DNA from: Anolis carolinensis
Taxonomy: Eukaryota
Direction of reading: 5' to 3'
Length of the DNA: 64,000 bases
Assembly (NCBI RefSeq): GCF_035594765.1
Contig: NC_085846.1
Coordinates: 21,563,190-21,627,189, forward strand
Positions 20,259 to 64,000 of the stretch are shown in pieces; the first letter of the stretch is position 1; each line of letters begins with the position of its first letter. Made by a program: the position numbers and the translations under genes. Below the pieces are notes generated by a model. The model did not search any database. It worked only from the letters and a program-made list of their open reading frames with translations, and was not told the origin of the DNA.

Positions 20259-23200
20259 ATGGGGAGCCTGTTTACAGTTGTGGTGGGACTCCTGATCCTT
20301 ATGCCCCTCCTGGGGAATATTTTCTTTCCTTACCTTTGGTTGGATTTATCTTTTCTCTTCACCATGCTACGTGTGGGATATAGGTGGCAGAAACGTATCA
20401 AAAGCAACCCACCCCTTACCGTGCTGGACATCTTCTTGGAGAAAGTCCAGAAACAACCAGAAAAGCCTCTGGTTCTCTTTGAAGAAGAAGTCTACTCCTA
20501 CAGGGACATCGACAACTGGAGCAGTAAAGTGGCCAGAGTGCTACAAAGCCATGTGGGCCTGAAAGAAGGGGAAACAGTGGGTGTTTTCTTGAAGAATGTC
20601 CCTGCCTATCTTTGGATCTGGATGGGCCTGGAGAAGATTGGCTGCACCATGGCCTGCGTCAACTATAACATCCGATCCAAGTCCTTGTTACATGTGATCA
20701 GCTCCTGTGAAGCCAAGGTGCTACTGACAACGCCAGGTGAGGGCTGCCTAGGTATAAGAAATGGTTACAGCAGGAGGGATATGTCTATTCTGTGCTAGTC
20801 ACATGATCACACCTAGCACATACATATCAGGACAAACACCTTTGTTATTGCATATCTCTTCATTTGGGCAATTGTGCTGATTTGCCAAACCAAGGTCCTG
20901 CAATCATCCTTCCACATACCCATGTAACTCATACTTCCTTGGCTTCATATATTTTTTACAGCACTTTCTCAGTGTCAGCAATAATTATTACCAACATTAT
21001 AGAGTTAAATAGTAAGGGAGGGGAAGGGGGGTGGGGAGAATGCCACATACTGATACCTGTCAGCTCTATATGGGGCATTTTTTTCTAACCCCAGTTGAGG
21101 AAGTTAGTGACCCTACTTTGGTACCATCTTAAGAATTCTGGTAACACCTTCATGAATGGCCATTGTTAATCCAGTTTTACAAGATCTTTAGCCTTCTCTG
21201 CCAGAGTGCTGGTTCATCAACAAACTACAACTTCACAGGGTTATATAGCACTGAGCCATGGCAGTTGTAGTGGTGTCAAACTGTATTACTTCTACAGTAT
21301 AGATGCACTCGTAGTAACTTGACCATTTTAACATGTATTTAGCAATTGCATGTGATGGGATTTCTGGGACTTGAAAGCCAAAAACATCTAGGGACCCCAG
21401 GTTGAGAACCACTGCCCTATATGCAAAAGTTACATTGGTGGAAATGGTTCATAAACAATATACTACATAATTTCTAAGTGGGAATTTATATTTTGACCTT
21501 CCAAGACAGGAGAAATTTGTTGGGATTCATCCTGGACTACTCAAGTCTAAATGTAGTCAGATAGATGATAGAGTTAGATTGAGGGAATCCTTCCCCCCCC
21601 CCCTTTCCAAAGCATGCCTAGATAGGATTCACCATTGTTTCCTGGTTCCCATCCTATTTAGGTCAGCCCACCCTTTGATGTTCCTAGAAATGTAATCTCT
21701 CCTAGGGCTTTGACGTAACTTCCCCAATTTGATCCTTTGGAATGTTTATGGCCCTAGAGAAGAAGTGACCAGACCCACGAGGCTGACCGCCATTCCAGCT
21801 TCCTGCTTTGTTCCAGAGAGGACGCACCTCTGTCCTCTATTAGTCAAGATGTAGCCTATCTATAGAGTTTTTTATTTTAATCCGTCTATGTGTATTAGAA
21901 CAGGATAGATCAGTTAGTTAGATCCAAACCTTTTCTATCCATCAATGGATTTCTTTTTACCTCAATAAATGCTTTTAATCTTTAAAGCTAACTTTGCATC
22001 CCTTTTGCCTTCCTGATGACACAGAGGCCTTCCGAAACTCACACTCGCGTAAGTCTCAAGTCTCACCCTGCTGCAATTCTTTACTCTGCTATTTTAATGG
22101 GAATTTGCCTCATAAAAGAGGGTGATTAGAGCTTAACGGCTCTTCCATTCCCAACAAAGGGTTACGGGCCCAGAACACTTGTGAGCAGACAAAGGGTTTT
22201 AATGCCCAGGAGGACGCGGAAGTGCTGAGTAAGGATTTTTAAAGGATTGGCATGAAAAAGGAGCAAAGATTATTTGGAGGTAATTTTTTGGATTTTATTT
22301 GTTGATTTTTGGAGCATCTTAATTTTTGGAAGCTGAAGATGGAAAGGAGACAAGATCCTTTTGTTGCATAATTTCTAAGTGGGAATTTATATTTTGACCT
22401 TCCAAGACAGGAGAAATTTCAAAAAGGAGTGCCTAAAAAGTCAATTCAGATTTCAGTTCTTTTTCTCTTTAAGACTTTCAGGGTGCAATTGAAGACGTCC
22501 TGCCTACTCTAAACAATAAAGGGGTACGCGTTTTCTACCTGAGTGATGACTCTCCAACTGAAGGTGTGGAAGCTTTGCAGGGACAGATCAAAACCAGCTC
22601 AACTGAACCAGTTCCTGCTTCTTTCCGAGCCAACATAACTTCCAAATCAACATCCTTGTATATTTTCACATCTGGAACCACAGGTGAGGACAAAGGATGT
22701 AACCTCAATGACAGACCATGTTGTTGGACTTCAAAATATTTTCCTGATTTTTTATGGCATGCCTTTGCAATGGCCAGTGAGTGGTTTACACCATGCTTTG
22801 CAATTCTTGGTACTTCCAGCTAGAAAAATCAAAGTTTTCAACGCCTTGAAGACTTATCACCAGGCACAGAATTGGGTTGAATGAATGTGTGGTTTGATTC
22901 AGTGGAAGGGAGTTTCAAATTAAATTTGACCCAATCCTCACAGTACATGCAAGCGTATTTTAACCAATGATGTTTCCCAGCCTATTCTCCACTCAAGTGC
23001 ACTTCTGCAAATTTTCCCCTAACATTAAGTCCAGTCGTGTCCGACTCTGGGGGCTGGTGCTCATCTCCATTTCTAAGCTGAAGAGCCGGTGTTGTCTGTA
23101 GACGCCTCCATGGTCATGTGGTTAGAATGACTGCATGGAGCGCCGTTACCTTCCTGCCAGAGTGGTACTTATTGATCTACTCACATTCATATGTTTTCGA

Positions 23201-29200: not shown

Positions 29201-32200
29201 CTATGCGGGAGACGTGCAAAAGACAGAAAAGAAAATGCTTCGGGATGTCTTGAAGAAAGGAGACTGCTACTTTAATAGTGGTGATCTTCTGATGCAAGAC
29301 CACGAAGGCTTCATATATTTCCAGGACCGGGTAGGAGATACCTTCCGGTGAGTCTCAAAGCATACTCCTTAATGTGGATAGGTTCTTCTTATTGTTGAGA
29401 AGATGGTGCTGGGGTGGTGTCTGTTGAATCCTTGGGTCTTGTTGGCACCATCATGCCTATGATGCATGCACTGTACACACCAGTGGCCCATGGACCAAGT
29501 AAGGGAACATTACACACAAAACAGCAGAATAAGGCACCCCATTTTTCTCACATCAAGAGACTTCTATAGCATAGAGCAATTCTGTGCATGTTCATATGGA
29601 AATGAATCCCACTGTGTTCATCTGGGTCAACACCCATGCAAAATCTAGATGGCACATGCACAAATGTAAAAAAAAAGAAGTCAGGGAGGGAAACTATGAA
29701 TTAGGAAAACTTTGGTTTGATTCCCAGAGGGATCTGCGGGATGGCATCAGGAATCAACGCTATCAAGCCCCCGATGAGACCTGAACCTTCATTGTATTAA
29801 AAGAGAGAGTGTAGCATAGACATTTCAGAGAGTTAGACTAGGCTTAGAAGTTTCAAGTTCTAGCTAATGATCAGCCATGAAACCCATACATGGATCAGTC
29901 AGCAGGGAGCCATGTGTGCCATGCTAATACAATTAGAAAAAAGGTGGAATGTGGCTGATTTAGCTATCTGGTCAGCTAGACAGACTATTAAAAAACTCAT
30001 AAACGTTCACTTCTAATCCACTAATATTAACCCACCCTCTCATTGCAGCTGGAAAGGGGAGAATGTGGCCACTACAGAGGTTGAAGCGACCCTGGTAGAA
30101 GTTGACTTTATTCAGGAAGTTAATGTATACGGGGTACCAGTGCCAGGTGAGTCTGAAATGTGATTAAAAGCACCTTACTGATGTTTTGTTTCATATCCAG
30201 TAATATGTGATCATGGTCTACTCTTCAGAAATGTGTTGAAGCAGAGCTGGTTAGAATCCACATTTGTACCCATTTTGGGTATCTTACTATTTTTTTGCTT
30301 TTTTTGTTTTTGATTCTTTGAAATGATTTCCAGAAGCTTGTGGATGTATAAGATCATATTAGATGGGGTTAACACAAACAGGCCCAAAGTTCCTTTGTTG
30401 CCCTTTACTAAAATTTCAAAACAGGCTTCGTGTTGCCTTGAGATACTTTGTGTTAGAGCGTGAAAACATGTGCGGGGTGAGAAAATGCTACAGTTTGCCC
30501 TGACCTTTTCTATCTTCAGCAAACCTATAACCTTCATTCATGTATTTGGTCAGTGTGTTAATAGATAACATGGAGAAGCCATATACATGTATTGTCAGCC
30601 TTTCATAGTTGCTGGAGTAAGGGTCACATAAACGTGTGTGTGTGTGTGTGGGGGGGGGGGATGACATATTAAAACCTCATTTTTTACCTAAAAGAACATC
30701 TCCAGTGGCTCAGTGTGTTAAAATGCTGAGCTGCTGAACTTGAAGACAGAAAGGTCCCAGGTTCAAATCCGGGGAGTAGAGTGAGTGCCCACTGTTAGCT
30801 CCAGCTTCTGCCAACCTAGCAGTTCGAAAACATGCAAATGTGAGTAGATCAATAGGTACCGCTCCAGCGGGAAGGTAACGGCGCTCCATGCAGTCATGCC
30901 GGCCACATGACCTCGGAGGTGTCTACGGACAACACCGGCTCTTCGGCTTAGAAATGGAGATGAGCACCAACTCCCAGAGTCGGACACGATTGGACTTAAC
31001 GTCAGGGGAAACCTTTACCTTTACTAGGTCTTCCAGGATGACTTTGTGGTCAATTTCCACTGGAAGCTGACCTTAGAATTATACTGAGTGACTCAAAGAT
31101 TCCTAGAGAGGTGTTTAGAAGTTGATGATAGAGTTGAACTAAGGAGTCCAGCATTTCATAGAGATAACATTTTAAATCTCTGATAGTCAAATCTGCAAAT
31201 GTAGAGGGCTGGCTGTATATTCATGTGTGGAAACTCTTCATATGCCTGCCAAGCAGACCAGTGANNNNNNNNNNNNNNNNNNNNNNNNNNNNNNNNNNNN
31301 NNNNNNNNNNNNNNNNNNNNNNNNNNNNNNNNNNNNNNNNNNNNNNNNNNNNNNNNNNNNNNNNNNNNNNNNNNNNNNNNNNNNNNNNNNNNNNNNNNNN
31401 NNNNNNNNNNNNNNNNNNNNNNNNNNNNNNNNNNNNNNNNNNNNNNNNNNNNNNNNNNNNNNNNNNGAACATATGATCTTATCACCATATGTTCTTTCAG
31501 CATATGAGGTCATTTGAACTTCTCCTTGCTTCTTCTAATCTTCTAACACCACTGACCACTCCACAATGTTTTTGCCTCCCCAAATTGGCTGTGGAATTTC
31601 AAATGGGGGAGAAATGGAATTAATGAAGAGGTATACGCAAGAGATACAACTGGATGAAGTTTATGGTCTTATTACTATAGAACTGCAAATCACCCTCTCT
31701 CACACTTGCTCAAACATTCACTCGAGGCAGAATTTACTCCCTCATTCAATATACAAGTCCACACGCAATGCCTACTACCTTCTGCCATACATTGTAGTTG
31801 TGTGTTGTTCATCACTGCCCTAGTAGCAGCTAAAAGTGAGTGTTGTTTGTAACATCCAGCTCTTTCCCTTAACCACACTTTTCTTATTTGTTTCAGGGCA
31901 TGAAGGAAAGATTGGGATGGCTGCCATACGGCTCAAGGAAGGACTTCCCTTTGATGGAAAGAAGCTATATCTCTATTCCAAAGATTATTTACCAAATTAT
32001 GCCATACCTCGCTTTATTCGTATCCAGGTGTGGAAACTTTGTGTTGCTTTACTCCCTAATGTGGATTTGTAACTGTGCAACTTGTAAAGAAATCTCTACA
32101 GATATATGACTTTGAAGTTGCCAAAGAAAACTCTGGATGCTTGCTGATAGGAAGGGCAACTGCAGCAAGGAAAGCAATAACAATAGGACAGGCAGGCCAG

Positions 32201-34196: not shown

Positions 34197-35135
34197 TTAG
34201 AGGAAGAATGGCATTTGAAGTTTGAGTATATGCTTCAGACCTTCTTTCATTTCTTTATTCCGCAGGGAAAAGATGATTGGGTTTAGTGCTGGGGTCACAA
34301 CATTGTAGAGCACAGATGCCAAGGTGTCTATCTTTACCGAATGGCAAGAGCTGGGTCGGTTGTAATTGAACATGCAGGTGCTGTAGAAGATGGTGACCAC
34401 TATGAGATGTGAGGAACAAGTGGAGAATGCTTTGTGGCGGCCCTGGGTGGTGCGGATCCTCAGAATTGCCCTCACAATGTGGCTGTAGAAAGCCATGATG
34501 CATAGAAAAGGACTAACGCCAAGCAGCAAGGTGACTACAAACAATGTGATTTGGTTCAAGAACGTGTCCTGGCAAGACAGTTTGAGAAGCTGTGGAACAT
34601 CACAGAATACATTTTCAATTTCATGAGAAGCACAGAAAGGCACCTGAGCAGTCATGGCAGTGTGTAGCATGGCATTGAGGAAGCCACAGACCCAGGAGGT
34701 TGCCACCAAACCTGTGCACAGCTTTCTGTTCATGAAGAGAACGTATGTAAGAGGGTGGCAGATAGCAACATAGCGGTCATATGCCATTACAGCCAAAAGG
34801 AGACACTCAATGCCCAGAAAGGCCACTAGGAAGTAAAGTTGGACTAGACAGCCCTGAATAGATATTGTCTTTATCTCAGTCACTAGATACTTTAGCATGT
34901 GGAGCAGCGTGACTGAAGTGTAGCAGATGTCCAGGAAAGACAGGTGTCGGATGAAGTAGTACATGGGTGAGTGTAGCCCAGAGTTCAGGGATGCTGTGGC
35001 CAAGATAAGCCCATTGCCAAGCAAAGCAGTGAGATATATCATGAGAAATATGAGAAAGAACAATAGGTGGGGCTCAGGGAAGCTGGAGAAACCCAGGAAG
35101 ACAAAAGTCACCGTTTGATTTTGGACCAGCTCCAT
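34197..35135 (-). CDS. Olfactory receptor, class II-type, intact 312 aa
   Basis: Single-exon ORF with N-glycosylation site NQT and motifs GN, LHSPMYYF, MAYDRYVAICHPLTY, FCDVP, KAFSTCSSHL, PALNPIIFSLRN; splice acceptor (ttccccatttcag) 9 nt upstream of the ATG. Confidence 0.97.
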   Translation of the reverse strand: MELVQNQTVTFVFLGFSSFPEPHLLFFLIFLMIYLTALLGNGLILATASLNSGLHSPMYYFIRHLSFLDICYTSVTLLHMLKYLVTEIKTISIQGCLVQLYFLVAFLGIECLLLAVMAYDRYVAICHPLTYVLFMNRKLCTGLVATSWVCGFLNAMLHTAMTAQVPFCASHEIENVFCDVPQLLKLSCQDTFLNQITLFVVTLLLGVSPFLCIMAFYSHIVRAILRIRTTQGRHKAFSTCSSHLIVVTIFYSTCMFNYNRPSSCHSVKIDTLASVLYNVVTPALNPIIFSLRNKEMKEGLKHILKLQMPFFL

Positions 35136-39543: not shown

Positions 39544-42500
39544 CTATGAATCACAAGGACAGATTTTCAGGGGGATCTCTTTGTCCCAGACCTGGAAAAA
39601 AGGAAACACAGCCTCGGAGAAAGGATAGTTGAAGGTGAAGAGATGCTCCATGGAGTCACCATCATAAAAGGAAAGAATGTCAAAATCATACTCCAGGTGT
39701 ACCTTGATCCTTTTTGGAGATTTCCACAGTATTAGAATGGTGGAAGGCGTGGTGGAAGCTGCATATTCTCCCCCGTTCAAGTTCAGCACCCAATAGCCTT
39801 TGGTAGCAGTGACGTACGGCTGCCACTTTCTCTCTGCTGATTTCCGGGCAACACCAATGGCCCATCCCTTGGCCTTGCCCACTTCCACCATCCATTCCAC
39901 AGTCCCAGAGTCAATTCCTTCGGCTCCCAGGACACACGGAGAAAAATTGAAGCGCTCAGGGTTGTCAGGAAGAGACTGGGCATGGGTGCCCATATGCACA
40001 CTTTTCCGATCTTCAGAAAGGACGAGGGCAGGGTAGGCAGTCTTAGGATCCAACACAATCTCCACTGGCGATCAAAAACAGAGAGAAGGTTAGTGTGATC
40101 CTTTCCAAAGTCATCAGGACACTGGCCTGAATCCAAACACAGTCAACCTGTTGAAATTAAGTTATGACTAATATAAATCTCATTTATTTCAATTGCTCTT
40201 CCAACTAGTACAGGGGTCCCCAAACTAAGGCCCGGGAACCAGATGCATTCCCCAAAGTCATTTACCTGGCCCCTGTCCTAAACTTTAGACTTAGGGTTGG
40301 CCTAAGTCTACCTGATCTTTGGAGGTCTCTTTGCTTAGCTACAGCCGTATGAGACCATCTAGATGGCTTTTGGAGGTCACTTTCATTACCTTTGGTCCTA
40401 TGAGGCCATCTAGATGGCCTTTGATGTTGCCTTTACTTAGCTATGGTTTTATGAGATTGTCTTGATGGCCTTTGGGGGCCCCTTTCCTTACCTATGGTCT
40501 TATGAAACCATCTAGATGGTCTTTGAGGATACCTTTCCTTATCTATAGTCTTATGAGACCATCTAGATGGCTTTTAGAGGTCACTTTCCTTACCTATGGT
40601 CCTATGGGACCATCTAGATGGTCTTTGAGGATCCCTTTCCTTATCTATGGTCTTATGAGACCATCTAGATGGCTTTTGGAGGTCACTTTCATTACCTATG
40701 GTCCTATGAAACCATCTAGACGGTCTTTGAGGATCCCTTTCCTTATCTATGGTCTTATGAGACCATCTAGATGGCTTTTGGAGGTCACTTTCATTACCTA
40801 TGGTCCTATGAGACCATCTAGATGGTCTTTGGAGGTCTCTTTGCTTACCTATGGTCTTATGTAATCGTCTAGATCAGGGGTTCCCAAACTAAGGCCCTCT
40901 AAGGTCATTGACCTGGCCTCTGTCCTAAACTTTAGACTTAGGGTTGACCTAGGTCTGAAATGACTTGAAGGCACACAACAACAACAATCCTAATTTTGGA
41001 CTATTTCATCATAGTCCGGCCTCCGCAACAGTCTGAGGGACTGTGAATCGGCCCTTCACTTAAAAGGTTTGGGGACCCCTGAACTAGTATGACTAACTTT
41101 AGACCCACAGATTTAGAAAAAAATAAAGAACAGGGTAATTCCAAGGTAAAGATCAAGATATTCTGTCATTTGAAGAGCAGTGGAGATTTAATAGTGCCTG
41201 TACTCAAACGGACAATGTGTTGGTAATCTCACATCAGAACAACATATTTTATGTGTGGCCAAGACCCAAAAATAACATATAAAACAGCTCTGTATGTAAG
41301 CAAAACAATACGTTTGAGAACCACATATGTGGGCCTGATCGAGGTAAATTGTACAGGTGATAAGGAAATATACACACACATACACACACACACACACACA
41401 CAGTTTTATTATATTTATTTACTATATTGTTATAAGTGTCTTACTTTAACTTATTGCATAGAGTGTAATCAAGTCATATCAAGGCTTGTTGTTTGGTATG
41501 ATATTGTGACATGGCCTAAGGGCTAATCAATAAAAAAAAATATTCAGTACCTGAGATATTCTCTGCATTGTCCAGTGTTTTGCCAATCCATCAGCCCCTA
41601 AAATCCATCTGCCGGTAACTCACCTTTCTTCTGAGTCCCACAAAACCTGTCAACAAGATTTGCTTGTATTTTTTCATCCTTCTTCCTTTTTTCCTCCTTG
41701 GTCAAAGGTTTTTTAACTTGACGAAAATCTATTAGCAAAAAAAAAAGTTGGGGGTGAGAGCACTTTTGCTTCTCTTATTTCTAGAATCAATACAAGATCA
41801 ATTAGGATCATTTTCTAAGTAGCATCATCACGGTGCTATAATTATGGATGGTTGAATTAAATCGAGTGCATGTAAATTGGTCAATAAATCTTTTATCACA
41901 GAGATGCCTTATGGCTCCAGCTACTTCTTCTTAGGAAACTGGATTCTAGGAGAAAGCTGGAAACCCTAAAATCTCTTGCCTCTCTGAAATGGCATGGACA
42001 TGCACCAAGCAATATAAATGGTGGATTTGGTCATGTAATCTGAATTTGAAATAGATGGGCAGATCTATATACCAATCAAAGATCTGCATGACTTTCTCAA
42101 GCATATATAGTATGACTTTCCAATCTGTGGGGGATACATTCTTAGGGCCCTTCCACACAGCCATATAACCCAGAATATCAAGGCAGAAAATCCCACAGTA
42201 TCTGCTTTGAACTGGGTTATCTTAGTCCACACTGCCATATATTCCAGTTCAAAGCAGACAATGTGGGATTTTATTCCAGCTATGTGGAAGGAGCCTAAGA
42301 TACACATACAGATATCTGAAATATGGATTAAAAACATATCCTACATTTTGACTACACTTGGGTTGCAAGCATAACATAGACTTGCATTGGAGGATCTACA
42401 GAGTTCAAAAACTCTTCCATGGGGGTATATTTTTTGGAGCATGAATAAGTAAATCTGTTGTTATAAAATTCATGGATAATAGGGTTGTACTATTGGAGCT

Positions 42501-43342
42501 CCCGTGGCGCAGCGGATTAAACCGCCGAGCTGCTGAACTTGTTGGCAGTTAAAATCTGGGGAGCGGGGTGAGCTCCTACTGTTAGCCCCAGCTCCTGCCA
42601 ACCTAGCAGTTCAAAAACATGAAAATGTGAGTAGATCAATAGGTACTGGTCCGGTGGAAAGGTAACAGCACTCCATGCAGTCATGCCAGCCAAATGACCT
42701 TGCAGGTGTCTACAGACAACGCTGGCTCTTTAGCTTAGAAATGGAGATGAGCACCAACCCCCAGAGTCGGACACGACTAGAATTAATGTCAGGGGAAAAC
42801 CTTTACCTTACTATTGACCAGAACACTGAAAGCAATTAGAATTAGTTACTATAGAAAAGGAAAGCTCCTTCAAATACTTGGGTGGTGCCTGTGGCCCCAT
42901 CTATACTGCCATATAATGCAATTTGACTGCACTGAACTAAGTTATATGAATCTATACTGCCATATAATCCAGTTCAATGCAGTTAAACTGCATTCTAATT
43001 CTGCATTATTTGGCAGTGTAGATGGGGCTTGAGTCCAGCATTTCTTTTTTCTTTCTTTCACTTACATGATGGCATCTCGTTTCTAACTTTTGCCGACAGA
43101 TCCTTCCTGTTTATTCGGTCAAAGATGTTGGCGGCCACCTCGACTGCCTTGTCCTCATCAAATGTCGTGACCATGAGACGTGACAGCTCAGTGGCGTCTG
43201 CCTTCTCGGTCTTACTGTGCCGAATGGGCTTGAAGCCCTCCTCGACTGGGTATTCTTCAAGGTGCATCTTAAATGTCTTCATTTCCACATCTCGCAGATC
43301 TTCAATATAGTGAAACAGCTTGCAGCGGACGCTATCGGACAT
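39544..43342 (-). CDS. PYD (pyrin domain) - PRY/SPRY (B30.2) fusion protein, ~300 aa, 3 coding exons
   Basis: Exon A 43342-43066 (277 nt, PYD MSDSVRCKLFHYIEDL..FKMHLEEYP..TEKAD..INRKDL; in-frame TAA upstream; donor gtaagt). Exon B 41728-41624 (105 nt, YFRQVKKPLTKEEKRKKDEKIQANLVDRFCGTQKK; donor gtgagt). Exon C 40064-39544 (521 nt, VEIVLDPKTA..PERF..WMVEV..LEYD..FPFF). All junctions phase 1; total 903 nt, open. Joining of the exons is inferred. Confidence 0.82.
40211..41081 (+). mobile_element. Composite non-autonomous hAT (OposCharlie1/OC1-like) with two 5' ends
   Basis: TIR CAGGGGTCCCCAAAC/GTTTGGGGACCCCTG; TSD AACTAGTA (40203-40210, 41082-41089); second 5' end at 40876. Confidence 0.88.
40310..40875. 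repeat. 51-bp minisatellite (~11 copies, alternating A/B variants)
   Basis: CCATCTAGATGG-type palindrome at 40355, 40406, 40508, 40559, 40610, 40661, 40712, 40763, 40814. Confidence 0.92.
42495..42812 (+). mobile_element. Sauria SINE
   Basis: Head, body and ACCTTT tail. Confidence 0.88.
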
Positions 43343-43694
43343 CTTAGCTCCCAGTTAGGATGTATCTGGGGAAAGAGGGGAAAAGATGTTATGAAGAGCC
43401 CAATAGAAGAAAAACTGGGGAGCAGGAAACATTGAAAGAAGGAGGAGGCTCCTGACTAACCTCAATAAAAGTACTTTTAAGGGGTTAGTGCTGTATTTTA
43501 AATGATTAATTGGATCTTTAAATATTCAATTGGCATTGAATATTATATCTTCTTTAATTGTGGTTTTACTTCACGACATCTTGACTTTTTTTTCGAAAAA
43601 AGTACTTTTTTGGATCTTATTGTGATTTGTCTTGAGCTCCAGGTCTGAAGAAAGGTAGAATAGAAATCCAATGGATAAAAGTTGTTGTAGTTCA

Positions 43695-43930
43695 TATAAT
43701 TATAAAATCACATAGTTGGAAAAGACCACAAGGGTCACCCCCTGCCATGCAGGAACACACAATCCAAGCATTCCTGGCAGATGGCCATCTATCTTCTGCT
43801 TTAAAAGCCTCCAGTGAGGGACTCTGAGGAAGCATAGACTACTGCTGATCAGCTCTTATGGTCAGTAATGTTTGGGTGGAATATCCTTTACTGCAGTTTC
43901 AATCCATTTTCAGAAGAAAATAAACTTGCT
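43695..43930 (-). mobile_element. CR1 3' fragment
   Basis: tagttggaaaagacc..cagatggccatc..aaagcctcc, homologous to 4360-4820. Confidence 0.7.
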
Positions 43931-48985: not shown

Positions 48986-51900
48986 TCACTCCAAGTCATT
49001 GAGTAGCTGTAGTTCGAAGACCTGCAGATGTTCCTTAAGCCGCCGCTGTGCATCAGCACCATGTGGCTGCCGTTCCCGCTGCAGCTCACAGATCCGCAGG
49101 CGGAGTCGCTGCTCCCGGCGCCGACAGGCTTGCAGTTGCCGCTGTGCTTTCCCCAAAGCATTGAGCGCAGCTTCTGCCCGTCTTTTCCACAGCAAGGCAC
49201 TACCCACCTGGTAGCTGTGCTCATTCTGGATGTAGGCACCAGCGGGAGGAGGGAGGCGTAGCATGTAGAGAGAAAGGGACACGGGGTGGGATGGATCGCC
49301 CACCGGTTCTGGGAGAGCGGGAGAAGGAGATGCTTCCTCCTGAGCCGTAGCAGCTGGCGACTGTTCTAGGGGAATGGCTGACAAAGTCGCCAAGGGCTCC
49401 GGTTCTGGCTCAGGAAGGATGGGCTGGCTTCGAGGCTCACCACTAGTGGGAGCAGCTCCAGGACTCGGTAGTTCTTGGGCTGGGAAGCAGGAGATATCTG
49501 TGCACAATGGAGCAGGCTCCTCCTCTGGACATGGATTGCAGCTGTGAGAAAGGAAGAGAATCGGGGTCAGGTGGGAAAGCAGTAGGAAAGATCATCTACC
49601 ACAGAAGTAGGTCATGAAAAGGAATTAAGCATTAAGATGCTAAGGACCCACTGAATGCATGTTCTTGCATATACAGCCTTCACAATACCAAGGCTTCAGC
49701 AGGCCAGCTTGGATCATCACATAAAGTGTCACACTTGGACATGGAAAACAGGGAAACTCTCTAGGCAGTATTGTAAAGATTGTAAAGATAAAAAGAGACG
49801 TATTGTAAAGATAAAAAAATAGCAAGGGCTATTGTAAAGATAAAAAGAGACGAAGGTGCGAAAGAGACCAATGGACACTAGTTACAATAAAGGTAAAAGT
49901 TTTCCCCTTGACATTAAGTCTAGTCGTGTCCGACTCTGGGGGTTGTTGCTCATCTCCATTTCTAGGCCGAAGAGCCGGTGTTGTCCGTAGACACCTCCAA
50001 GGTCATGTGGCCGGCATGACTGCATGGAGCACCGTTACCTTCCTGCTGGAGCAGTACCTATAGATCTACTCACATTTGCATTTTTTTCCAACTGCTAGGT
50101 TGGCAGAAGCTGGGGCTATAGCGGGAGCTCACCCAGCTCCCCGGATTTGAATTGCCAACCTTTTGGTCAGCAAGTTCAGCAGCTCAGCGGTTTAATCTGC
50201 TGTGCCACCAGGGGCTCCACTAGTGATAATAGCCATGTCCAAATTTAGTCCATAAACTATAATCCAAGTTCTATTTCTTCCCAGAATTAACTATGCCGAA
50301 GCCTAGTGTCTACCCCTTCTCCCCTTCTCCCACTTCCCAACCTGCTTATTTTGCCATGTTCTTAATTTCATGCTCCATAATAGCATCCTATAATGCTGCT
50401 TGAAAAATGCCTCTATACAAAGTCTAGTATCCCTGATCCAAAAGTCAGCTTAAGAGTGAATTCTTACCTAAGTTCCTCTTAATACGGTGACAATTCCTTC
50501 AGAGAAAACCTCCACAGGATGTAAGATGAGAGTTAGAAGGCCAGTACTCACCTCTGCTTCTGCTGCCGTTTTGCAAGTCTGGAGTTGCTTAGCTTTGATT
50601 TTTGGCGTGGTTTGGCATGAAACTCAAATATAGTAGGAACAGCACCCTCCTTGAGCCGATGGTAACCGCTAGAAGGGAAACAGTGGCATTTATAAGGCAT
50701 GAATGGCTACAGTAGCCTGGCATAATACGAGTGTTATCCAGAAAGTTCATTACGTTTTGGAATTAAAAATAAACGAGGTATAGGAGAAAACATTTACCAT
50801 ATTCAGTTGAAAGCCAGACCCAAATACTAGTTATCACCATAGTCCCCACTGAAATCTAGGTAGTTATCATAGCGATAAAAGTGTTTGAAAAGCCCTCCCC
50901 CCCCCAAGATTCCCGCCTGGCTTGCGTCCTGAACCAGGCTGGCTTCCCTTCCCTCAGCTGTCAAGTGGTGCGCTCAGCTTTCCGCACGATCTTCCTAGAT
51001 CGCTCTTTTGTTTTGCAGATGCTTGCAAGGAAGGTTTTTTGGGACAGGAAAGGTGTGCTTCTTGCAAAACCTTTCAACTGAATATGGTAAATGTTTTCTC
51101 CTATACTTCGTTTATTTTTAATTCCAAAACGTAATGAACATTCTGGATAGCCCTCGTACTTTTTGAATTATGGACCTCTGGGCAGAAAAATGAGTTTCTG
51201 AAAGCGTCAAGATTCTAGAAGCTGTTAGCATCATTTCTGCTTCACAGTATTATCTCTGCAACCCCATGAATCTAAGGGAAACACTCCTGTGTGACTCTAA
51301 ATACTATGATTTATGCTCCCGGCCCCACCAACAAAGCCAAGGAAGTCCATCTTGATATCTCACTACAGCTTTCTCCTTTCCCTCTCACATGCAGATCTGA
51401 CATTGCTTCTACTGTGTCAGTCTGTCATCCAGTATCGTCTACTGTGAACTGTAATGATTCTACAGATATAAAGCAAAGCCAGTCCCTGTGCTCTAACTCC
51501 CTTTTCTCTCACCTCTTCACCACACACAAGTACCAAACTGATTAACCCATGTGTGGTGAGTATCTAGTCACTTTGTAGAGCACAAAAATGTGACACTTCT
51601 AACAACTCAAAGAAAGACACAGCTCCACTGGCTCTTGGAGGTTTTTGTTTTGTTTCATAGTGGGGTGTCTTCCAAGAGTGTTATCATACCTATTATCATA
51701 CCTATTTTGATTAATTCATGCAGTTTTTTTAACTTTAAAATTTTGCAGACTGCTGGGGCTTTCGGAATTGGTGGGGTTCTCAAAGCTTGCACTGAACTTG
51801 CCTGAAGAGTCACATGTGTCCCCTGAACCACATTAATCTCAAGCCAAAATAACCTGTCCTAAATGCCCAGAGATGTTAAATGTAATTTGGATTTGGGAAG

Positions 51901-52802
51901 GGTACTCATCTGATTTTGGAAGCTAAGCACATTAGTACTTAGATGAGGGCCTAGCAAAAACAACTAGGAGCAGCAGGCTAAATTTCAGAAAAAGGCAATA
52001 TCCAAGAAAATCCTATGAAATTCATGAGGCTGCAATTAGTGAACAGGAAACTTGAAAGCATATGCATAGGTACACATATTTTCCTATGATGGCATTTCTC
52101 CGTCACAGAGAAAAAGTAACTGAAAATTGAATAAATGGGAGTCGACCTCTTTGCTTTTCTTCTTCAAGTCATTTTTACTTCTCTTCCCTACAGTTTCTCT
52201 GTATGAAGGCTTCAAAACATAGAAGCTAAGCTACAGTTGGAATCTACTTGCCAGCCACATCACAACCAGCGCCCAATGTACCATCTAAGGTACTGCTGAA
52301 CTGTAACTGCATGCGGCCTTTTGAACTTTGTTCAACCCTTGATGACCTACCTGGTGCCTACCAATTCGAAGCAACTCTTCTCAAAGTGCTTGGAGCAAAA
52401 GTAAACATACTTAGAGGCAGGGTCCCAGAGACCTTGGCCGCTCAAGTCCTTTCTCCGACAGTTCTCCAACCATGTCGCTCGGCGTGGATTGTCCTTCGGT
52501 AGTCTGTGAGAAGACATACAGAGTGGAACTGAGTTAGCCTGGGAGACAGCATGCAACACAATCCCCGGCTCATCTTTGGAGTGCAGTTCCCATCCTGTCA
52601 CTGACAGCTGGGCTGATAAATTCCCTGCAATAACGGAAAAAGATTCAATCCAGCCTGCGCTCAATTCAACATGGTCATTGAATGGGAGGCTGGGAAGGGG
52701 CCCAAGTGGGATGAGCTCTCACCGATGGAAGGAAATGCCTCGGTTACGTGTCTCAGGTGTGTCACGGGTGCAGCAGCCAGTCGCAGAGCAGTGACGGGGC
52801 AT
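48986..52802 (-). CDS. THAP7: THAP domain-containing protein 7, 301 aa
   Basis: Exons 52802-52723 (80), 52503-52351 (153), 50668-50552 (117), 49541-48986 (556), canonical splice sites, total 906 nt. [45 protein letters not shown] (C2CH THAP domain plus AVPTIF box), then [21 protein letters not shown] (EHSY HCF-1-binding motif and coiled coil) matching THAP7. AATAAA on - at 48807-48812. Confidence 0.97.
49889..50218 (-). mobile_element. Sauria SINE (THAP7 intron 3)
   Basis: Full-length reverse-complement copy. Confidence 0.88.
50728..51156. mobile_element. Mariner-type MITE with ~85-bp TIRs
   Basis: TA|CGAGTGTTATCCAGAAAG..CAGTTGAAAG and CTTTCAACTG..TTCTGGATAGCCCTCG|TA. Confidence 0.88.
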
Positions 52803-60541: not shown

Positions 60542-60766
60542 NNNNNNNNNNNNNNNNNNNNNNNNNNNNNNNNNNNNNNNNNNNNNNNNNNNNNNNNNNN
60601 NNNNNNNNNNNNNNNNNNNNNNNNNNNNNNNNNNNNNNNNNNNNNNNNNNNNNNNNNNNNNNNNNNNNNNNNNNNNNNNNNNNNNNNNNNNNNNNNNNNN
60701 NNNNNNNNNNNNNNNNNNNNNNNNNNNNNNNNNNNNNNNNNNNNNNNNNNNNNNNNNNNNNNNNNN
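60542..60766. other. Assembly gap
   Basis: Run of N. Confidence 1.
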
Positions 60767-61059
60767 ATCTCAGGCATTTCAAATAAGCAATATTCAATAT
60801 GTAGTAGCAAGTACATATTCCTATTTAAATATACAAACAAATCCAGAATTCCAGATAGTCTAACTATACCTAAACGTTGTCTTTAAATTCTCCTGAAAGA
60901 AAAAGTAAATGTCCACATGGAGGCAAGACTGAGCACCCATCTACACTGCCATGTAAAATGCAGATTATGAGTCTACATATATGGCAATGTAGACTCATAT
61001 AATCCACTTCAAAGAAGATAATCTGGATTTGATATGGCAGTGTAGATGGGGCCTGAGAA

Positions 61060-62114
61060 GCGAGAAAAACTAAAAGTAATAATCAAGCGCAAGCAAAGAG
61101 AGGGCAGGCAAGGAAGCATAAATAAAAAGCAATAAAATGATTGTACAAAGACATAAAATATAGAAAGCTAGAAGCAAAGCATAGGAGCAAGAATGGAAAA
61201 AAGAAGACCAGAAGGAAGAAAAGAGGAAAAGGAGCCAGAGATAAAGAATGAAGAGCAGCAACCAAAGAAGACGAAGAAAATCAAAAGGTAGAGGAGGAGA
61301 AAAAGGGAAAGAAGAAGAGAGGGAGGAGGATGAAAACAAAAAAGAAGAACAGGAGAAGGCAGAAGAGGAGGAAAAGGAAGAGGAGGAGGAGAAAAGGAGA
61401 AGGAGAGAAAGAAAGAAAGGACGATGGGGGTGAAAGGTAGAAGAAGAGTCCAGAAAGAAGAAAAAGAACAAGAAGCAGAGGCACACAAGAAGACAGAGAA
61501 GGGGAAGAAAGAAGAAGAAGAACTAGGATCAAAAACCAGAAGGAGGATGGAAGGAAAAGTGGGAAAGAAGAAGAAGAGAAAGAGGAATAGGATCCAAGGA
61601 AGAGGAAAAGGATGAAGAAAAGGAAGAGGAGCAGGAGAGGGAAAGCATAGCAGGTTAAACCACCAGCTTCAGTAAATCTTATCAATCAAAAGGTTGACGG
61701 TTTGAAGCCTGGGTTAGGGTGAGCTCCTGGCCTTTAGCCCAGTTTCTGCCTATCAGTTCAAAAGCAAAATGTGAGTAGATAAATAGGTACCACTTAAAAG
61801 CGGGGAGGTATTAAGGCACCCATAAGGATATGCCAGAAAAATGTGATCAAGGAGGAAGTTTACGAACAAAGCTCTTTGGCTGCGAGATGTAGCAACAGCA
61901 CCCCCTCCCGCAATGGCTGAAACTGAGTACAAGCCTCCAAGATGCAAAAGATGGGAAAAGCCTATATATACCTCTATCTAAGTACAATTTTCTGTCTTGT
62001 CAGTGTATATATGTCATTGAATATTTGCTGCATATGCATGTTCTGTGATCTGCCCTGAGTCAACTTTGGGGTGAAAAGGGAGGAATATAAATATTGTAAA
62101 TAAATTTTAAAAAG

Positions 62115-62181
<67 letters not shown>

Positions 62182-63520
62182 GAAGAAGGTGGAGAGGGAG
62201 CAAAAAGATGGAGAAAGGGTGGAGAAAGGGGAAGAGAAAAAAGAACAAGAAACAGGAACACAAGAAAGGAGAGGAATAGCAAAAAGAAGATGAAGAAGTG
62301 GGAGAAAAAGAACAGAAAGAGAAGGGGGAAGAAAAAGAGCAAAGGATGATGTGGAGAAGGAGGAGGTGGAGCAACAGCAGGCAGGTAAGATGAAAAGAAT
62401 GAAGAGGAGGAGAAAAAGGGAGTATGAAGAAAAATGGAGGAAAAATAGGAATAGTAAGGAAAAAAGGAGAAGCCAAAGAAGAGGAGGAATAAGAATATGG
62501 GGAGGGAGAAAAAGTTCAAGAGGCTGAAGAAAAAAAAACAGGATAAGAATAATATGGAGATGATAGAAGAAGAACAGCAGGAGGAAGAAGAAAAGAACAG
62601 AATTAGAGGAGGAAAAAGTAGAGAATGACAAGAAGAAAGAGAGGGTGAGAATAGGAGGAGTAGGAAGAAAAGAAGGAGAGGAGGAATAAAAAGGCACCAA
62701 AGTAAATGAAGAATAAGAAGAGGAGGAAGGAGAAGAAGGAGGAGGAATGGAAATAAGGAGCAGAAGGAAATAAAGAACAAGAGGAAGAAGGAAGAAAAGT
62801 CAAGAAAAAAAGGAGAAGAGGAGGAGGAAATAAAAACAAGGAGCAAAAGGAAATGAAGTACAAGAGGAAAAGGAGGAAGGAGAAGAATCCAAGGAAGAGG
62901 AAGAAGAGAAAACAGAAGGAAAAGAAAAAATAAAAAGAAGGAGAAGAAGGAAATAGAAAACAAGAGGAAGAGGAGGAATGAAGAGAATAAAAAGTCACGA
63001 AAGAGAGAGAAGGAAAAGAAAGAATAAAAAGAAATAACAGAAAGAAATGGAGAACAAGAGAAAGAGGAGGAATGAAGAAAAAGTCACGGAAGAGTGAGAA
63101 GGAAGAAAGGTTAGAGAAGGATGAAGTGAGAAGGGAAGAGGAGAAGGAAGAAGAAGAGTAGGAGGAGAAAAGAAGAAGAAAAAAGAAAATAGGAGATTGT
63201 CAATGAAGAGTAGGGAAAGAAGAACAGAGTGGGAGTAGGAGGAGGAAGTAGAGGAGATGGCAGAACAGGAAAAAAGAGGAATAGAAGGAGAATAGAGAGG
63301 AGAAGGAGGAAGAGGAAGATGGACAGGAGAACAAGTGAAAGAAGTGGATGAGGAGAAGGCCATTGAACGAGAAGGAAGAGATGACATGAAAGTAGTAGTA
63401 GGAAAAACAGGAAGAAGAAGAGGAAATTAAAAAAGAAGAGGAGAACGAATAAAAAGAAGGAACTAAAGGAAAGGAAGAACAAGAGAAAGAAGTGAGGAAA
63501 AAGAGGAAGAATTGTTGGAA
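61060..63520 (+). repeat. Purine-rich (GA) low-complexity tract, interrupted by a SINE and a (GT)n(GA)n microsatellite (62118-62181)
   Basis: Plus strand almost all A/G, with stops in all frames. Confidence 0.9.
61645..62105 (+). mobile_element. Sauria-SINE-related element with L2-like tail
   Basis: SINE-like head and gtgagtagataaataggtacc, ending tgatctgccctgagtc..aatataaatattgtaaataaa. Confidence 0.6.
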
Positions 63521-64000
63521 ATGGCAACCTCCCAAGCCTCTCACCATTTATTTGTTAATATATATATTTGCTAGCCTGTATTCTATATGTATGTTGATTT
63601 GTCAGTTTGACTGTACCTCTTTGGTGTGGGAGGGACTATAGGCATGTGATTGTACTGAACATGTTCAGACTCAGGACTCCATTTTGTATTCACTTTTGCA
63701 TCAGACCTCAGTGGAGGTGGATGCAAGTATGTGTTTGGTCTTCAATAAAAGCAGGTGTTTCTGTCCAGACCTCAGTGGAAGTGGGTGCATGTATGTTGCT
63801 GTTTGGACTTCAATATAGAAGTATGCTTATGAACTTCAATAAGTACAAGTATACTTAAAGACTATAGGCTATTGACTAAGAATGATACCCTGTGTACTCA
63901 ACACAGAGAAACTACATCCTACATAACTGAACTTCAATAAGAAATGTGCCTGTATGATGAATGAATCCAAGATGTTGTGAGTAAACAAGATATGTTATTT

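What the first reader, a model, noticed from the sequence alone, without database searches (positions are those of the whole stretch)
39544..43342. Minimal PYD-B30.2 'mini-pyrin': candidate undescribed reptile inflammasome sensor or regulator
Seen: three phase-1-compatible exons give an open ~300-aa protein, PYD (92 aa) + 35-aa charged/basic linker + full PRY-SPRY. I found no NACHT, LRR, RING, B-box or long coiled coil between them, and the ATG has an upstream in-frame stop. Known: mammalian pyrin (MEFV) is PYD-long linker-B-box-coiled coil-B30.2; B30.2 domains act as ligand or capsid sensors (TRIM5, TRIM21, BTN3A1); PYDs nucleate ASC filaments. Inference: a one-step sensor-to-ASC adaptor that must be clustered by a multivalent ligand because it has no oligomerisation module, or a POP-like inhibitor of ASC/NLRP3 targeted by its B30.2. 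I cannot confirm it is absent from the literature.
Basis: partly seen in the sequence, partly recalled or inferred. Interest (0 to 1): 0.85.

Follow-up and report, generated by a model that had tools for sequence, protein, structure and literature searches.

The report
Reptile PYD–B30.2 gene with NLRP3-type PYD
The window holds a real, intact and widely conserved lizard gene for a small two-domain immune protein (a pyrin "death-fold" domain joined to a B30.2 ligand-binding domain); it is not a shortened copy of mammalian pyrin, its pyrin domain is the closest known relative of the one in mammalian NLRP3, and no paper in the searched library describes it.

Summary
On the minus strand, three phase-1 coding exons (43342-43066, 41728-41624, 40064-39544) have canonical AG/GT sites, an in-frame upstream stop and a TAG stop. 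They encode PYD (Pfam 1e-22), a 35-residue linker and PRY-SPRY (5e-22, 1e-16). No other domain lies in the introns.

Orthologues of about 300 aa with the same architecture and exon structure occur in many squamates, tuatara, turtles and caecilians. None was found in birds, crocodilians, mammals or frogs. Databases name them misleadingly (BTN3A1-like, TRIM39-like). An intronless transcript-like contig from a relative joins the three exons. dN/dS is 0.2-0.45 in both domains.

It is not an MEFV orthologue. Its PYD scores 82 bits to human NLRP3 PYD and 24 to pyrin PYD. Its B30.2 is of the BTN/TRIM7 type. PYD trees group reptile family PYDs with mammalian NLRP3 PYDs (100/99), apart from the ASC-like PYDs of sauropsid "NLRP3".

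The most likely function (inferred, about 0.45) is an AIM2-like sensor in which B30.2 binds a ligand and the clustered PYD nucleates ASC. A POP-like regulator remains a serious rival.

I found no paper describing it. I rate it a new variant of a known kind, interest about 0.66.

The parts
43066..43342 (-). Coding exon 1: ATG plus PYD (92 codons + 1 nt, phase 1)
   Evidence: Sequence read. Pfam PYRIN 1.1e-22. 82 bits to human NLRP3 PYD. 92% identical to the A. sagrei orthologue.
43343..43364 (-). 5' UTR part of the first coding exon, after a probable acceptor (polypyrimidine tract + CAG ending at 43365); holds the in-frame TAA at 43357-43355
   Evidence: Sequence read. The transcript-like contig L008 aligns only from window 43354 downstream and its first 108 nt do not align nearby, which suggests a separate upstream UTR exon. 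This is an inference.
41729..43065 (-). Intron 1 (GT..AG), no coding domain
41624..41728 (-). Coding exon 2: 35-residue charged/basic linker (phase 1 to phase 1)
   Evidence: Sequence read. No Pfam family. In the orthologue model residues 96-100 are disordered and 103-122 form a helix at pLDDT about 63. This is the fastest-evolving part (dN/dS 0.24-1.9).
40065..41623 (-). Intron 2 (GT..AG), contains a 51/102-bp minisatellite at 40317-40861
39544..40064 (-). Coding exon 3: PRY-SPRY (B30.2) and TAG stop
   Evidence: Sequence read. Pfam PRY 5e-22 and SPRY 1.4e-16. Best PDB matches are BTN2A2 at 147 bits, BTN3A1 at 142 and TRIM7 at 134. 91% identical to A. sagrei.

Best explanation
What it is (high confidence, about 0.95). 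It is a functional single-copy gene of an anole-like lizard. It encodes a roughly 300-aa cytosolic protein made of a PYD, a short linker with one predicted helix, and a PRY/SPRY (B30.2) domain. It belongs to an old tetrapod family kept in lepidosaurs, turtles and caecilians. It is a mosaic: its PYD exon is the reptile counterpart of the PYD of mammalian NLRP3, and its B30.2 belongs to the butyrophilin/TRIM7/TRIM39 group. It is not an orthologue of pyrin (MEFV).

How it most likely works (inferred, about 0.45). It would act as an induced-proximity inflammasome sensor with the logic of AIM2. The B30.2 domain binds a ligand, probably a protein or a multivalent or oligomeric target. Because the protein lacks a NACHT or a long coiled coil, several copies must be brought together on that ligand, perhaps helped by the linker helix. 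The clustered NLRP3-type PYDs would then nucleate ASC PYD filaments, which recruit caspase-1.

Shown: gene structure, domains, conservation, purifying selection, the origin of each domain, and retention of most NLRP3 PYD interface residues. Inferred: ASC engagement, ligand-driven clustering and the inflammasome output.
For: - Gene model and domains.
- About 35 orthologues with only PYD+PRY+SPRY, across squamates, tuatara, turtles and caecilians.
- The same three coding exons in Sceloporus, Dermochelys and Microcaecilia.
- THAP / PYD-B30.2 / OR gene order conserved with Sceloporus.
- Logan contig L008 (1672 nt) carries an uninterrupted 302-aa ORF colinear with the three window exons, and the exon 2/3 junction is exact.
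- NG86 dN/dS is 0.19-0.45 (PYD) and 0.25-0.44 (B30.2) in three independent species pairs.
- The AF2 model of the orthologue has pLDDT 84.5 with both domains folded.
- Foldseek gives BTN3A1, TRIM7 and TRIM21 B30.2 at target-normalised TM-score (TMt) 0.90-0.95.
- PYD similarity: 82 bits to human NLRP3 PYD, against NLRP12 47, ASC 24.6 and pyrin 24. In a scan of 1.84 billion proteins, eutherian NLRP3 is the best NLR (NACHT-containing) hit outside the family.
- PYD trees: the split of reptile family plus mammalian NLRP3 PYDs has support 97/98 and 100/99. The AU test rejects a clade of mammalian plus sauropsid NLRP3 PYDs at p=9e-4 and 6e-6.
- Residues shown by mutagenesis to be needed for NLRP3-PYD filaments and ASC nucleation are R7, E15, K23/K24, M27, R43, R80 and R81 (PMC9106292). 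They map to R6, E14, K22/T23, M26, H42, R79 and K80 in the window. The family majority is K, K/R, M, R and K/R at these positions.
- ASC is present in the lineages that keep the gene: skink P0090, turtle P0053, caecilian P0159. ASC is lost in birds (PMC11258412), where no orthologue was found.
Against: - There is no functional or expression data for the window's species.
- T23 and H42 in this species depart from the K and R found at two interface positions.
- Snake copies have E at the K23-equivalent position.
- No ligand is known. The BTN3A1 phosphoantigen pocket is not conserved.
- Crocodilians keep ASC, but no orthologue was found there.
- pTM 0.61 leaves the relative orientation of the domains and any autoinhibition unknown.
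- Sequence cannot tell a protein that nucleates ASC filaments from one that caps them.
Confidence: 0.45

Rival explanations
1. POP-like or decoy regulator. The NLRP3-type PYD would bind ASC or NLRP PYDs without productive nucleation and so dampen inflammasome assembly. The B30.2 would target the protein to a partner such as caspase-1, an NLRP or a cellular structure, or would make the inhibition conditional.
For: - The protein is small and has no NTPase or long coiled coil.
- Mammalian POPs also arose from copies of sensor or adaptor PYD exons (established knowledge).
- POP1 appears among the PDB hits.
- Some interface positions vary: T23 and H42 in the window, and E at the K23-equivalent in snakes.
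- dN/dS is moderately high for the PYD in the anole/Sceloporus pair (0.45).
Against: - Most of the interface residues needed for nucleation are retained across the family.
- The B30.2 is as conserved as the PYD (35 invariant positions of 173; dN/dS 0.25-0.44). That is more than a simple cap would need.
- Known POPs are PYD-only.
Confidence: 0.27
2. Adaptor in a non-ASC pathway. The PYD would pair with other reptile PYD proteins, such as the squamate multi-PYD and PYD-FIIND-CARD proteins. Alternatively the protein would act like a RING-less TRIM or BTN B30.2 module, for example as an autophagy receptor or in NF-kB or interferon regulation.
For: - Squamates encode unusual multi-PYD proteins whose PYDs are among the best hits of this PYD: Hemicordylus has 11 PYDs, Rhineura has 4 PYDs plus FIIND and CARD, and Tiliqua has PYD-CARD-PYD-FIIND-CARD.
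- The B30.2 is closest to the BTN and TRIM7 families, which have diverse functions.
Against: There is no direct evidence. PYD similarity to those proteins is 25-35% per domain, lower than to NLRP3. ASC is present in the same lineages.
Confidence: 0.18
3. A true pyrin (MEFV) orthologue that lost its B-box and coiled coil ('mini-pyrin' in the strict sense).
For: The domain order is the same, PYD at the N-terminus and B30.2 at the C-terminus. Pyrin B30.2 is among the PDB hits at 112-116 bits.
Against: - Pyrin PYD scores only 24 bits against 82 for NLRP3.
- BTN2A2, BTN3A1, TRIM7 and TRIM11 B30.2 all score above pyrin.
- The PYD trees place the family with NLRP3 PYDs.
- There is no B-box, coiled coil or long phospho-linker.
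- The literature places pyrin's origin in mammals (PMC11258412).
Confidence: 0.03
4. Artefact: the exons belong to different genes, or the locus is a decaying pseudogene.
For: There is no RNA evidence from the window's own species.
Against: - All exons are open with canonical splice sites and matching phases.
- The same structure holds in three other species (the ORF stays open across about 35 species).
- An intronless contig from a relative joins the exons.
- dN/dS is below 0.5 in both domains.
Confidence: 0.02

Closest known systems
Pyrin / TRIM20 (MEFV)
   Same: N-terminal PYD and C-terminal B30.2 in one cytosolic protein. Pyrin signals through ASC.
   Different: - No B-box, no coiled coil and no long phospho-regulated linker.
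- The PYD is only distantly similar (24 bits).
- The B30.2 is closer to BTN and TRIM7 than to pyrin.
- Pyrin is reported to appear first in mammals (PMC11258412).
PYD of eutherian NLRP3
   Same: - 44-47% identity over the whole PYD, 82 bits, best match in the PDB.
- They group together in PYD trees.
- Most filament and ASC-nucleation interface residues are shared.
- The first coding exon is 277 nt and phase 1 in both the mole NLRP3 and this gene. This feature is generic for PYD exons.
   Different: No FISNA, NACHT or LRR. The linker shows no evident similarity to the NLRP3 linker (by eye). The gene neighbourhood differs from the eutherian NLRP3 locus.
AIM2-like receptors (PYD + HIN)
   Same: The same logic: a PYD plus one ligand-binding domain with no NTPase oligomeriser, so clustering on a multivalent ligand is needed (established knowledge for AIM2).
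   Different: The ligand-binding domain here is B30.2, not HIN. The two are unrelated in sequence. AIM2-like receptors are confined to mammals.
Intracellular B30.2 of butyrophilins (BTN2A2, BTN3A1) and TRIM7
   Same: Best sequence matches (131-147 bits, 41-44% identity) and best structure matches (TMt 0.90-0.95). A helix precedes the domain, as in the BTN juxtamembrane region.
   Different: No Ig domains or transmembrane segment, and no RING, B-box or coiled coil. The BTN3A1 phosphoantigen pocket residues H351, H378, K393, R412 and R418 are S, A, Y, A and S here.
PYD-only proteins (POP1-4)
   Same: Small proteins built on a copied sensor or adaptor PYD exon.
   Different: This protein carries a conserved B30.2 domain. 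POPs are restricted to primates and other mammals.
Teleost PYD-coiled coil-PRY/SPRY proteins (e.g. P0136, P0210, P0221)
   Same: PYD and B30.2 in one protein without a RING.
   Different: They contain a TRIM-type coiled coil and are 430-480 aa long. Their PYDs fall in a fish clade. Two of the three B30.2 domains group with fish BTN/A33 and not with this family.

Membership tests
PYD (PAAD/DAPIN) death-fold domain proteins | Sequence match to the PYD profile and a helical-bundle fold | tested here: met
   Pfam PF02758 at 1.1e-22 against a cutoff of 22.9 bits. The AF2 model of the orthologue is helical over residues 5-89 at pLDDT 76-93.
B30.2 (PRY-SPRY) domain proteins | PRY and SPRY profile matches and a beta-sandwich fold | tested here: met
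   PF13765 at 5e-22 and PF00622 at 1.4e-16. Foldseek TMt 0.90-0.95 to BTN3A1, TRIM7 and TRIM21 B30.2.
Pyrin / MEFV orthologue | B-box and coiled coil between the PYD and the B30.2 | tested here: not met
   Only a 35-codon linker exon is present. There are no Pfam hits in intronic ORFs. Orthologues and transcript contig L008 have no extra exons.
Pyrin / MEFV orthologue | PYD and B30.2 most similar to those of pyrin | tested here: not met
   Pyrin PYD scores 24 bits against 82 for NLRP3. Pyrin B30.2 scores 112-116 bits, below BTN2A2, BTN3A1, TRIM7 and TRIM11.
Pyrin / MEFV orthologue | Conserved synteny with the mammalian MEFV locus | not tested
   The window neighbours are THAP, an OR and SLC27A-like genes. 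No mammalian MEFV locus was fetched.
NLRP (NLR family, PYD-containing) | NACHT NTPase and LRR domains after the PYD | tested here: not met
   No NACHT or LRR in the gene, the introns or elsewhere in the window.
NLRP3-type PYD (exon-level kinship) | PYD groups with eutherian NLRP3 PYDs to the exclusion of ASC and other PYDs | tested here: met
   Support is 97/98 and 100/99. The AU test rejects the alternative at p=9e-4 and 6e-6. The sampling of mammalian PYDs is thin: two NLRP3, one NLRP4 and two fragments.
TRIM proteins | RING, B-box and coiled coil | tested here: not met
   None detected. Database names such as TRIM39-like or TRIM7-like rest on the B30.2 alone.
Butyrophilins | Extracellular IgV/IgC domains and a transmembrane segment | tested here: not met
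   The protein starts with the PYD at the ATG, which is preceded by an in-frame stop.
BTN3A1-type phosphoantigen sensor | Basic pocket H351, H378, K393, R412, R418 | tested here: not met
   The aligned residues are S, A, Y, A and S (alignment). The residue list is from established knowledge, and the numbering was checked against W350, Y352 and W391 in the same alignment.
PYD-only proteins (POPs) | A PYD with no further domain | tested here: not met
   A conserved B30.2 domain follows.
ASC-dependent inflammasome sensor (functional class) | PYD nucleates ASC filaments on activation | not testable with these tools
   Only indirect evidence exists: interface residues are conserved and the gene co-occurs with ASC.

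The most novel reading that the evidence does not exclude
The PYD exon of this tetrapod PYD-B30.2 gene and the PYD exon of mammalian NLRP3 are orthologous. One ancestral amniote PYD exon ended up on a B30.2 in reptiles and on a NACHT-LRR body in mammals, through exon capture or gene conversion. This would help explain why 'modern' NLRP3 looks eutherian-specific and why sauropsid 'NLRP3' carries an ASC-like PYD. In reptiles the surviving gene would then work as a NACHT-independent, AIM2-style ASC-nucleating sensor of a protein ligand.
Probability: 0.2. Interest if true: 0.85.

Novelty: new variant of a known kind. Interest (0 to 1): 0.66.

Why it matters
Inflammasome sensors outside mammals are poorly mapped. 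Recent surveys state that pyrin and AIM2 arise in mammals, and they explicitly leave room for unrecognised reptile sensors (PMC11258412). This family is a candidate. It is a small, conserved protein under purifying selection that couples a ligand-binding B30.2 directly to an NLRP3-type PYD, and it occurs in lineages that keep ASC.

It offers a simple system for asking whether a B30.2 domain alone can drive ASC assembly.

Its PYD also bears on the open question of where the eutherian NLRP3 came from (preprint 10.64898/2026.04.26.720791). The nearest relative of the NLRP3 PYD found here sits on a non-NLR gene in reptiles.

On the practical side, dozens of database entries named butyrophilin-like, TRIM39-like, TRIM7-like or ERMAP-like are misnamed.

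Tried and rejected
1. Origin from a fish-type NLRP3 with a C-terminal B30.2 by loss of NACHT-LRR. Rejected: the B30.2 of a teleost NLRP3-like protein (P0114) scores only 30 bits against the family profile, while family members score 252-336.
2. BTN3A1-like phosphoantigen binding. Rejected: the pocket residues are not conserved.
3. [quoted passage not shown] Inconclusive.
4. Link to the marsupial/monotreme NLRP gene next to SLC27A5 (Williams 2026). The window has two SLC27A2/5-like genes, but the PDB holds only FATP2, so the paralogue could not be assigned. Unresolved.
5. Similarity of the linker exon to the NLRP3 PYD-NACHT linker. None evident by eye.
6. Hidden B-box or coiled-coil exons in the introns. 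None found.
7. ISRE motif near the gene. None found; the only two matches in the window are at 8.7 and 9.6 kb.
8. The region-restricted search with the alligator NLRP3 PYD found only crocodilian and turtle NLRP3, so no squamate NLRP PYD could be added to the trees.
9. The look-ups of P0097 and P0018 found no record.
10. The first AU test was unfair, because NLRP3-like fragments had been left outside the constrained group. It was redone without them.
11. TRIM7-type C-terminal-glutamine recognition was considered but not tested, because no residue-level alignment to TRIM7 was available.

No fetched contig was taken for human; the only mammalian locus is from the mole Talpa occidentalis. The two N-runs were left untouched. 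The joined spliced product of the window was not built or searched.
Full report
**1. The observation**

- Exon 1 is 43342..43066. It has its ATG at 43342, an in-frame TAA 15 nt upstream and the donor GTAAGT.
- Exon 2 is 41728..41624, 105 nt, with an AG acceptor and the donor GTGAGT.
- Exon 3 is 40064..39544, with a CAG acceptor and a TAG stop.
- All junctions are phase 1, and the sum is 903 nt.

The PYD exon matches Pfam PYRIN at 1.1e-22. The last exon matches PRY at 5e-22 and SPRY at 1.4e-16. The 35-codon middle exon matches nothing. For full-length analyses I used the annotated Anolis sagrei orthologue P0001 as a proxy.

Ten minus-strand ORFs inside the two introns have no Pfam match. No second copy of any exon exists in the window. 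The polypyrimidine tract and CAG just upstream of the ATG suggest that a non-coding 5' exon exists.

**2. It is a real and conserved gene**

The B30.2 exon alone finds about 300-aa proteins carrying only PF02758, PF13765 and PF00622. A. sagrei is 91% identical, followed by Sceloporus, Pogona, Phrynocephalus, Varanus, Podarcis, Hemicordylus, Python, Vipera, Thamnophis and others. The window is therefore from an anole or a close relative.

The two split codons of my model (Y and V) reproduce the residues at the junctions of P0001.

A profile search with 11 members (A1) extends the family to geckos, a skink, an amphisbaenian, tuatara, four turtles (about 50% identity) and two caecilians (about 40%). 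No bird, crocodilian, mammal, frog or salamander appears among hits that would have scored far above the threshold.

Database names rest on the B30.2 only and are misleading. They include butyrophilin 3A1-like, TRIM39-like, TRIM7-like and erythroid membrane-associated protein-like.

The coding-exon structure (92 codons + 1 nt, then about 35 codons, then the B30.2) is the same in Sceloporus, Dermochelys and Microcaecilia. The gene order THAP / PYD-B30.2 / olfactory receptor is the same in Sceloporus, with neighbours 82-94% identical.

A 1672-nt Logan contig (L008, run SRR12656983) carries an uninterrupted 302-aa ORF that is colinear with the three window exons. The exon 2/3 junction falls exactly at 41624>40064. 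An intronless contig with UTRs is best read as mRNA, so in a relative the PYD and SPRY exons are spliced together with nothing in between.

Pairwise Nei-Gojobori dN/dS was computed exon by exon for three independent pairs (window/Sceloporus, Dermochelys/Mauremys, Vipera/Crotalus). It is 0.19-0.45 for the PYD and 0.25-0.44 for the B30.2. The linker is relaxed.

**3. What the parts are related to**

Against all PDB sequences, the PYD exon scores as follows:

| PDB PYD | bits |
|---|---|
| human NLRP3 | 82 (E 2e-22) |
| NLRP12 | 47 |
| NLRP4 | 45 |
| POP1 | 29 |
| ASC | 24.6 |
| pyrin | 24 |

In an exhaustive scan of 1.84 billion representative proteins, family members, PYD-only fragments and proteins with several PYDs score highest; the best hit that is an NLR (a protein with a NACHT domain) is a eutherian NLRP3 at 44% identity. 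Alligator and turtle 'NLRP3' score much lower.

The B30.2 exon scores highest to BTN2A2 (147 bits), BTN3A1 (142), TRIM7 (134) and TRIM11 (122). Pyrin follows at 112-116 and TRIM21 at about 105.

An AlphaFold2 model of P0001, built with a 33-sequence family alignment, has mean pLDDT 84.5. It shows a helical PYD, a disordered stretch at 96-100, one helix at 103-122 with low confidence, and a confident beta-sandwich. Foldseek returns BTN3A1, TRIM7 and TRIM21 B30.2 at target-normalised TM-score (TMt) 0.90-0.95.

The protein is thus a mosaic and not a shortened pyrin.

**4. Trees**

In the B30.2 tree the family, caecilians included, is one clade (99/87). Its shape is roughly that of the species tree. 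Its neighbours are B30.2 domains of the TRIM39, RFP, BTN and A33 types. The architecture therefore goes back to the tetrapod ancestor.

A teleost NLRP3-like B30.2 is very distant (30 bits). This argues against descent from a fish-type NLRP3-B30.2 gene by internal deletion.

In PYD trees the reptile family groups with mammalian NLRP3 PYDs. Support is 97/98 under the mixture model with 37 rows, and 100/99 with a tetrapod-only set under LG+G4.

In the tetrapod-only tree, mammalian NLRP3 is sister to the reptile family, as expected for orthologous exons. The PYDs of crocodilian and turtle 'NLRP3' form a separate clade and are most like tetrapod ASC PYDs (50-52% identity).

AU tests reject a clade of mammalian plus sauropsid NLRP3 PYDs (p=9e-4 and 6e-6). 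They weakly reject a family-only clade that excludes mammalian NLRP3 (p=0.02).

Caveats on the trees:
- The alignment has only 92 columns.
- The groups were named after seeing a tree.
- Few mammalian PYDs were sampled, and no squamate NLRP PYD was available.
- The shared 277-nt phase-1 PYD exon is generic for PYD exons.

**5. Link to the literature**

Billman et al. 2024 (PMC11258412) report that pyrin and NLRP10 appear first in mammals. They also report that ASC is kept in crocodilians, turtles and lizards but lost in birds, and that unrecognised inflammasomes may exist in these animals.

A 2026 preprint (10.64898/2026.04.26.720791) argues that 'modern' NLRP3 and its locus are eutherian-specific. 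It also reports that a marsupial/monotreme NLRP lies next to SLC27A5.

The window has two SLC27A2/5-like genes next to the OR and the PYD-B30.2 gene. I could not decide which paralogue they are, so this lead stays open.

I found no paper describing a PYD-B30.2 protein of this kind. The library is incomplete, so this does not prove that none exists.

**6. Mechanism**

Hochheiser et al. 2022 (PMC9106292) showed by mutagenesis that R7, E15, K23/K24, M27, R43, R80 and R81 of the human NLRP3 PYD are needed for filament formation and ASC nucleation. In the window these align to R6, E14, K22/T23, M26, H42, R79 and K80. Across 33 family members the majority residues are R, E, K, K/R, M, R and K/R.

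ASC exists in a skink, a turtle and a caecilian.

I therefore favour, at about 0.45, an AIM2-like induced-proximity sensor. In this model the B30.2 binds a ligand, clustering brings the PYDs together, and the PYDs nucleate ASC and caspase-1.

The ligand is unknown. The phosphoantigen pocket of BTN3A1 is not conserved: H351, H378, K393, R412 and R418 align to S, A, Y, A and S. Surface loops of the SPRY part are the most variable B30.2 positions. Overall selection is purifying.

The rivals are as follows:

| Rival | Probability |
|---|---|
| POP-like regulator | 0.27 |
| Adaptor for other reptile PYD proteins, or a non-inflammasome role | 0.18 |
| True MEFV orthologue | 0.03 |
| Artefact | 0.02 |

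**7. Verdict**

I rate it a new variant of a known kind, with interest 0.66. The most novel reading that my evidence does not exclude is exon-level orthology with the mammalian NLRP3 PYD.

No fetched contig was taken for human. The N-runs at 31265-31466 and 60542-60766 were left as they are.

Noticed in passing
window 3880-33076 (+): There are two tandem SLC27A2/5-like (fatty-acid transport protein) genes. One is the 3' part of a gene with exons at 3880-4176, 10041-10382 and 10970-11275. The other looks complete, with its first exon at 20259-20798 and its last exon ending at 33076. The first exon scores 157 bits to human FATP2. Whether they are SLC27A5 co-orthologues matters for synteny with the marsupial NLRP locus.
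   Followed up: partly
window 34197-35135 (-): An intact 312-aa class II olfactory receptor lies directly downstream of the PYD-B30.2 gene. It is 82% identical to the syntenic Sceloporus OR and only about 41% identical to the ORs next to the mole NLRP3.
   Followed up: yes
window 48986-52664 (-): A THAP-domain gene with two ORF pieces (52664-52347 and 49507-48986) lies upstream of the PYD-B30.2 gene. It is 89-94% identical to the Sceloporus neighbour.
   Followed up: partly
window ~5900-7700: A GC-rich (67%) repeat array gives long Pro/Gly/Ala-rich ORFs on both strands. It sits inside or next to the first SLC27A-like gene.
   Followed up: no
window 5670-6011 (+); 4448-5083 (-); ~43690-43860 (-): Transposon fragments are present. 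One is a copia-type gag-pre-integrase piece (PF13976). Two are CR1-like LINE tails, and one of these lies about 350 nt upstream of the PYD exon.
   Followed up: no
window 40317-40861: A 51/102-bp minisatellite (about 10.7 or about 5 copies) lies in intron 2 of the gene. An (AC)n run is at 41372-41402.
   Followed up: yes
window ~60800-64000: A strongly purine-rich low-complexity stretch (GC skew up to 0.62, AT skew 0.48) yields long spurious Ser/Leu/Phe-rich ORFs on the minus strand.
   Followed up: no
window 31265-31466 and 60542-60766: Two runs of N (202 and 225 nt).
   Followed up: no
proteins P0034, P0036, P0052, P0042 (other squamates): Squamates encode unusual multi-PYD proteins. Hemicordylus has 11 tandem PYDs, Rhineura has 4 PYDs plus FIIND and CARD, Tiliqua has PYD-CARD-PYD-FIIND-CARD, and Lacerta has 2 PYDs. 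They are uncharacterised in the databases.
   Followed up: partly
proteins P0016/P0018 versus P0015/P0023 (snakes): Snakes have two paralogues, one of about 301 aa and one of about 286 aa with a shortened linker. They separate in the B30.2 tree, but the two Thamnophis PYDs pair together in the PYD tree. This hints at gene conversion of the PYD exon.
   Followed up: partly
proteins P0299, P0300, P0301, P0305: Crocodilian and turtle proteins annotated as NLRP3 carry a PYD that is 50-52% identical to tetrapod ASC PYDs and only 32-41% identical to mammalian NLRP3 PYDs.
   Followed up: yes
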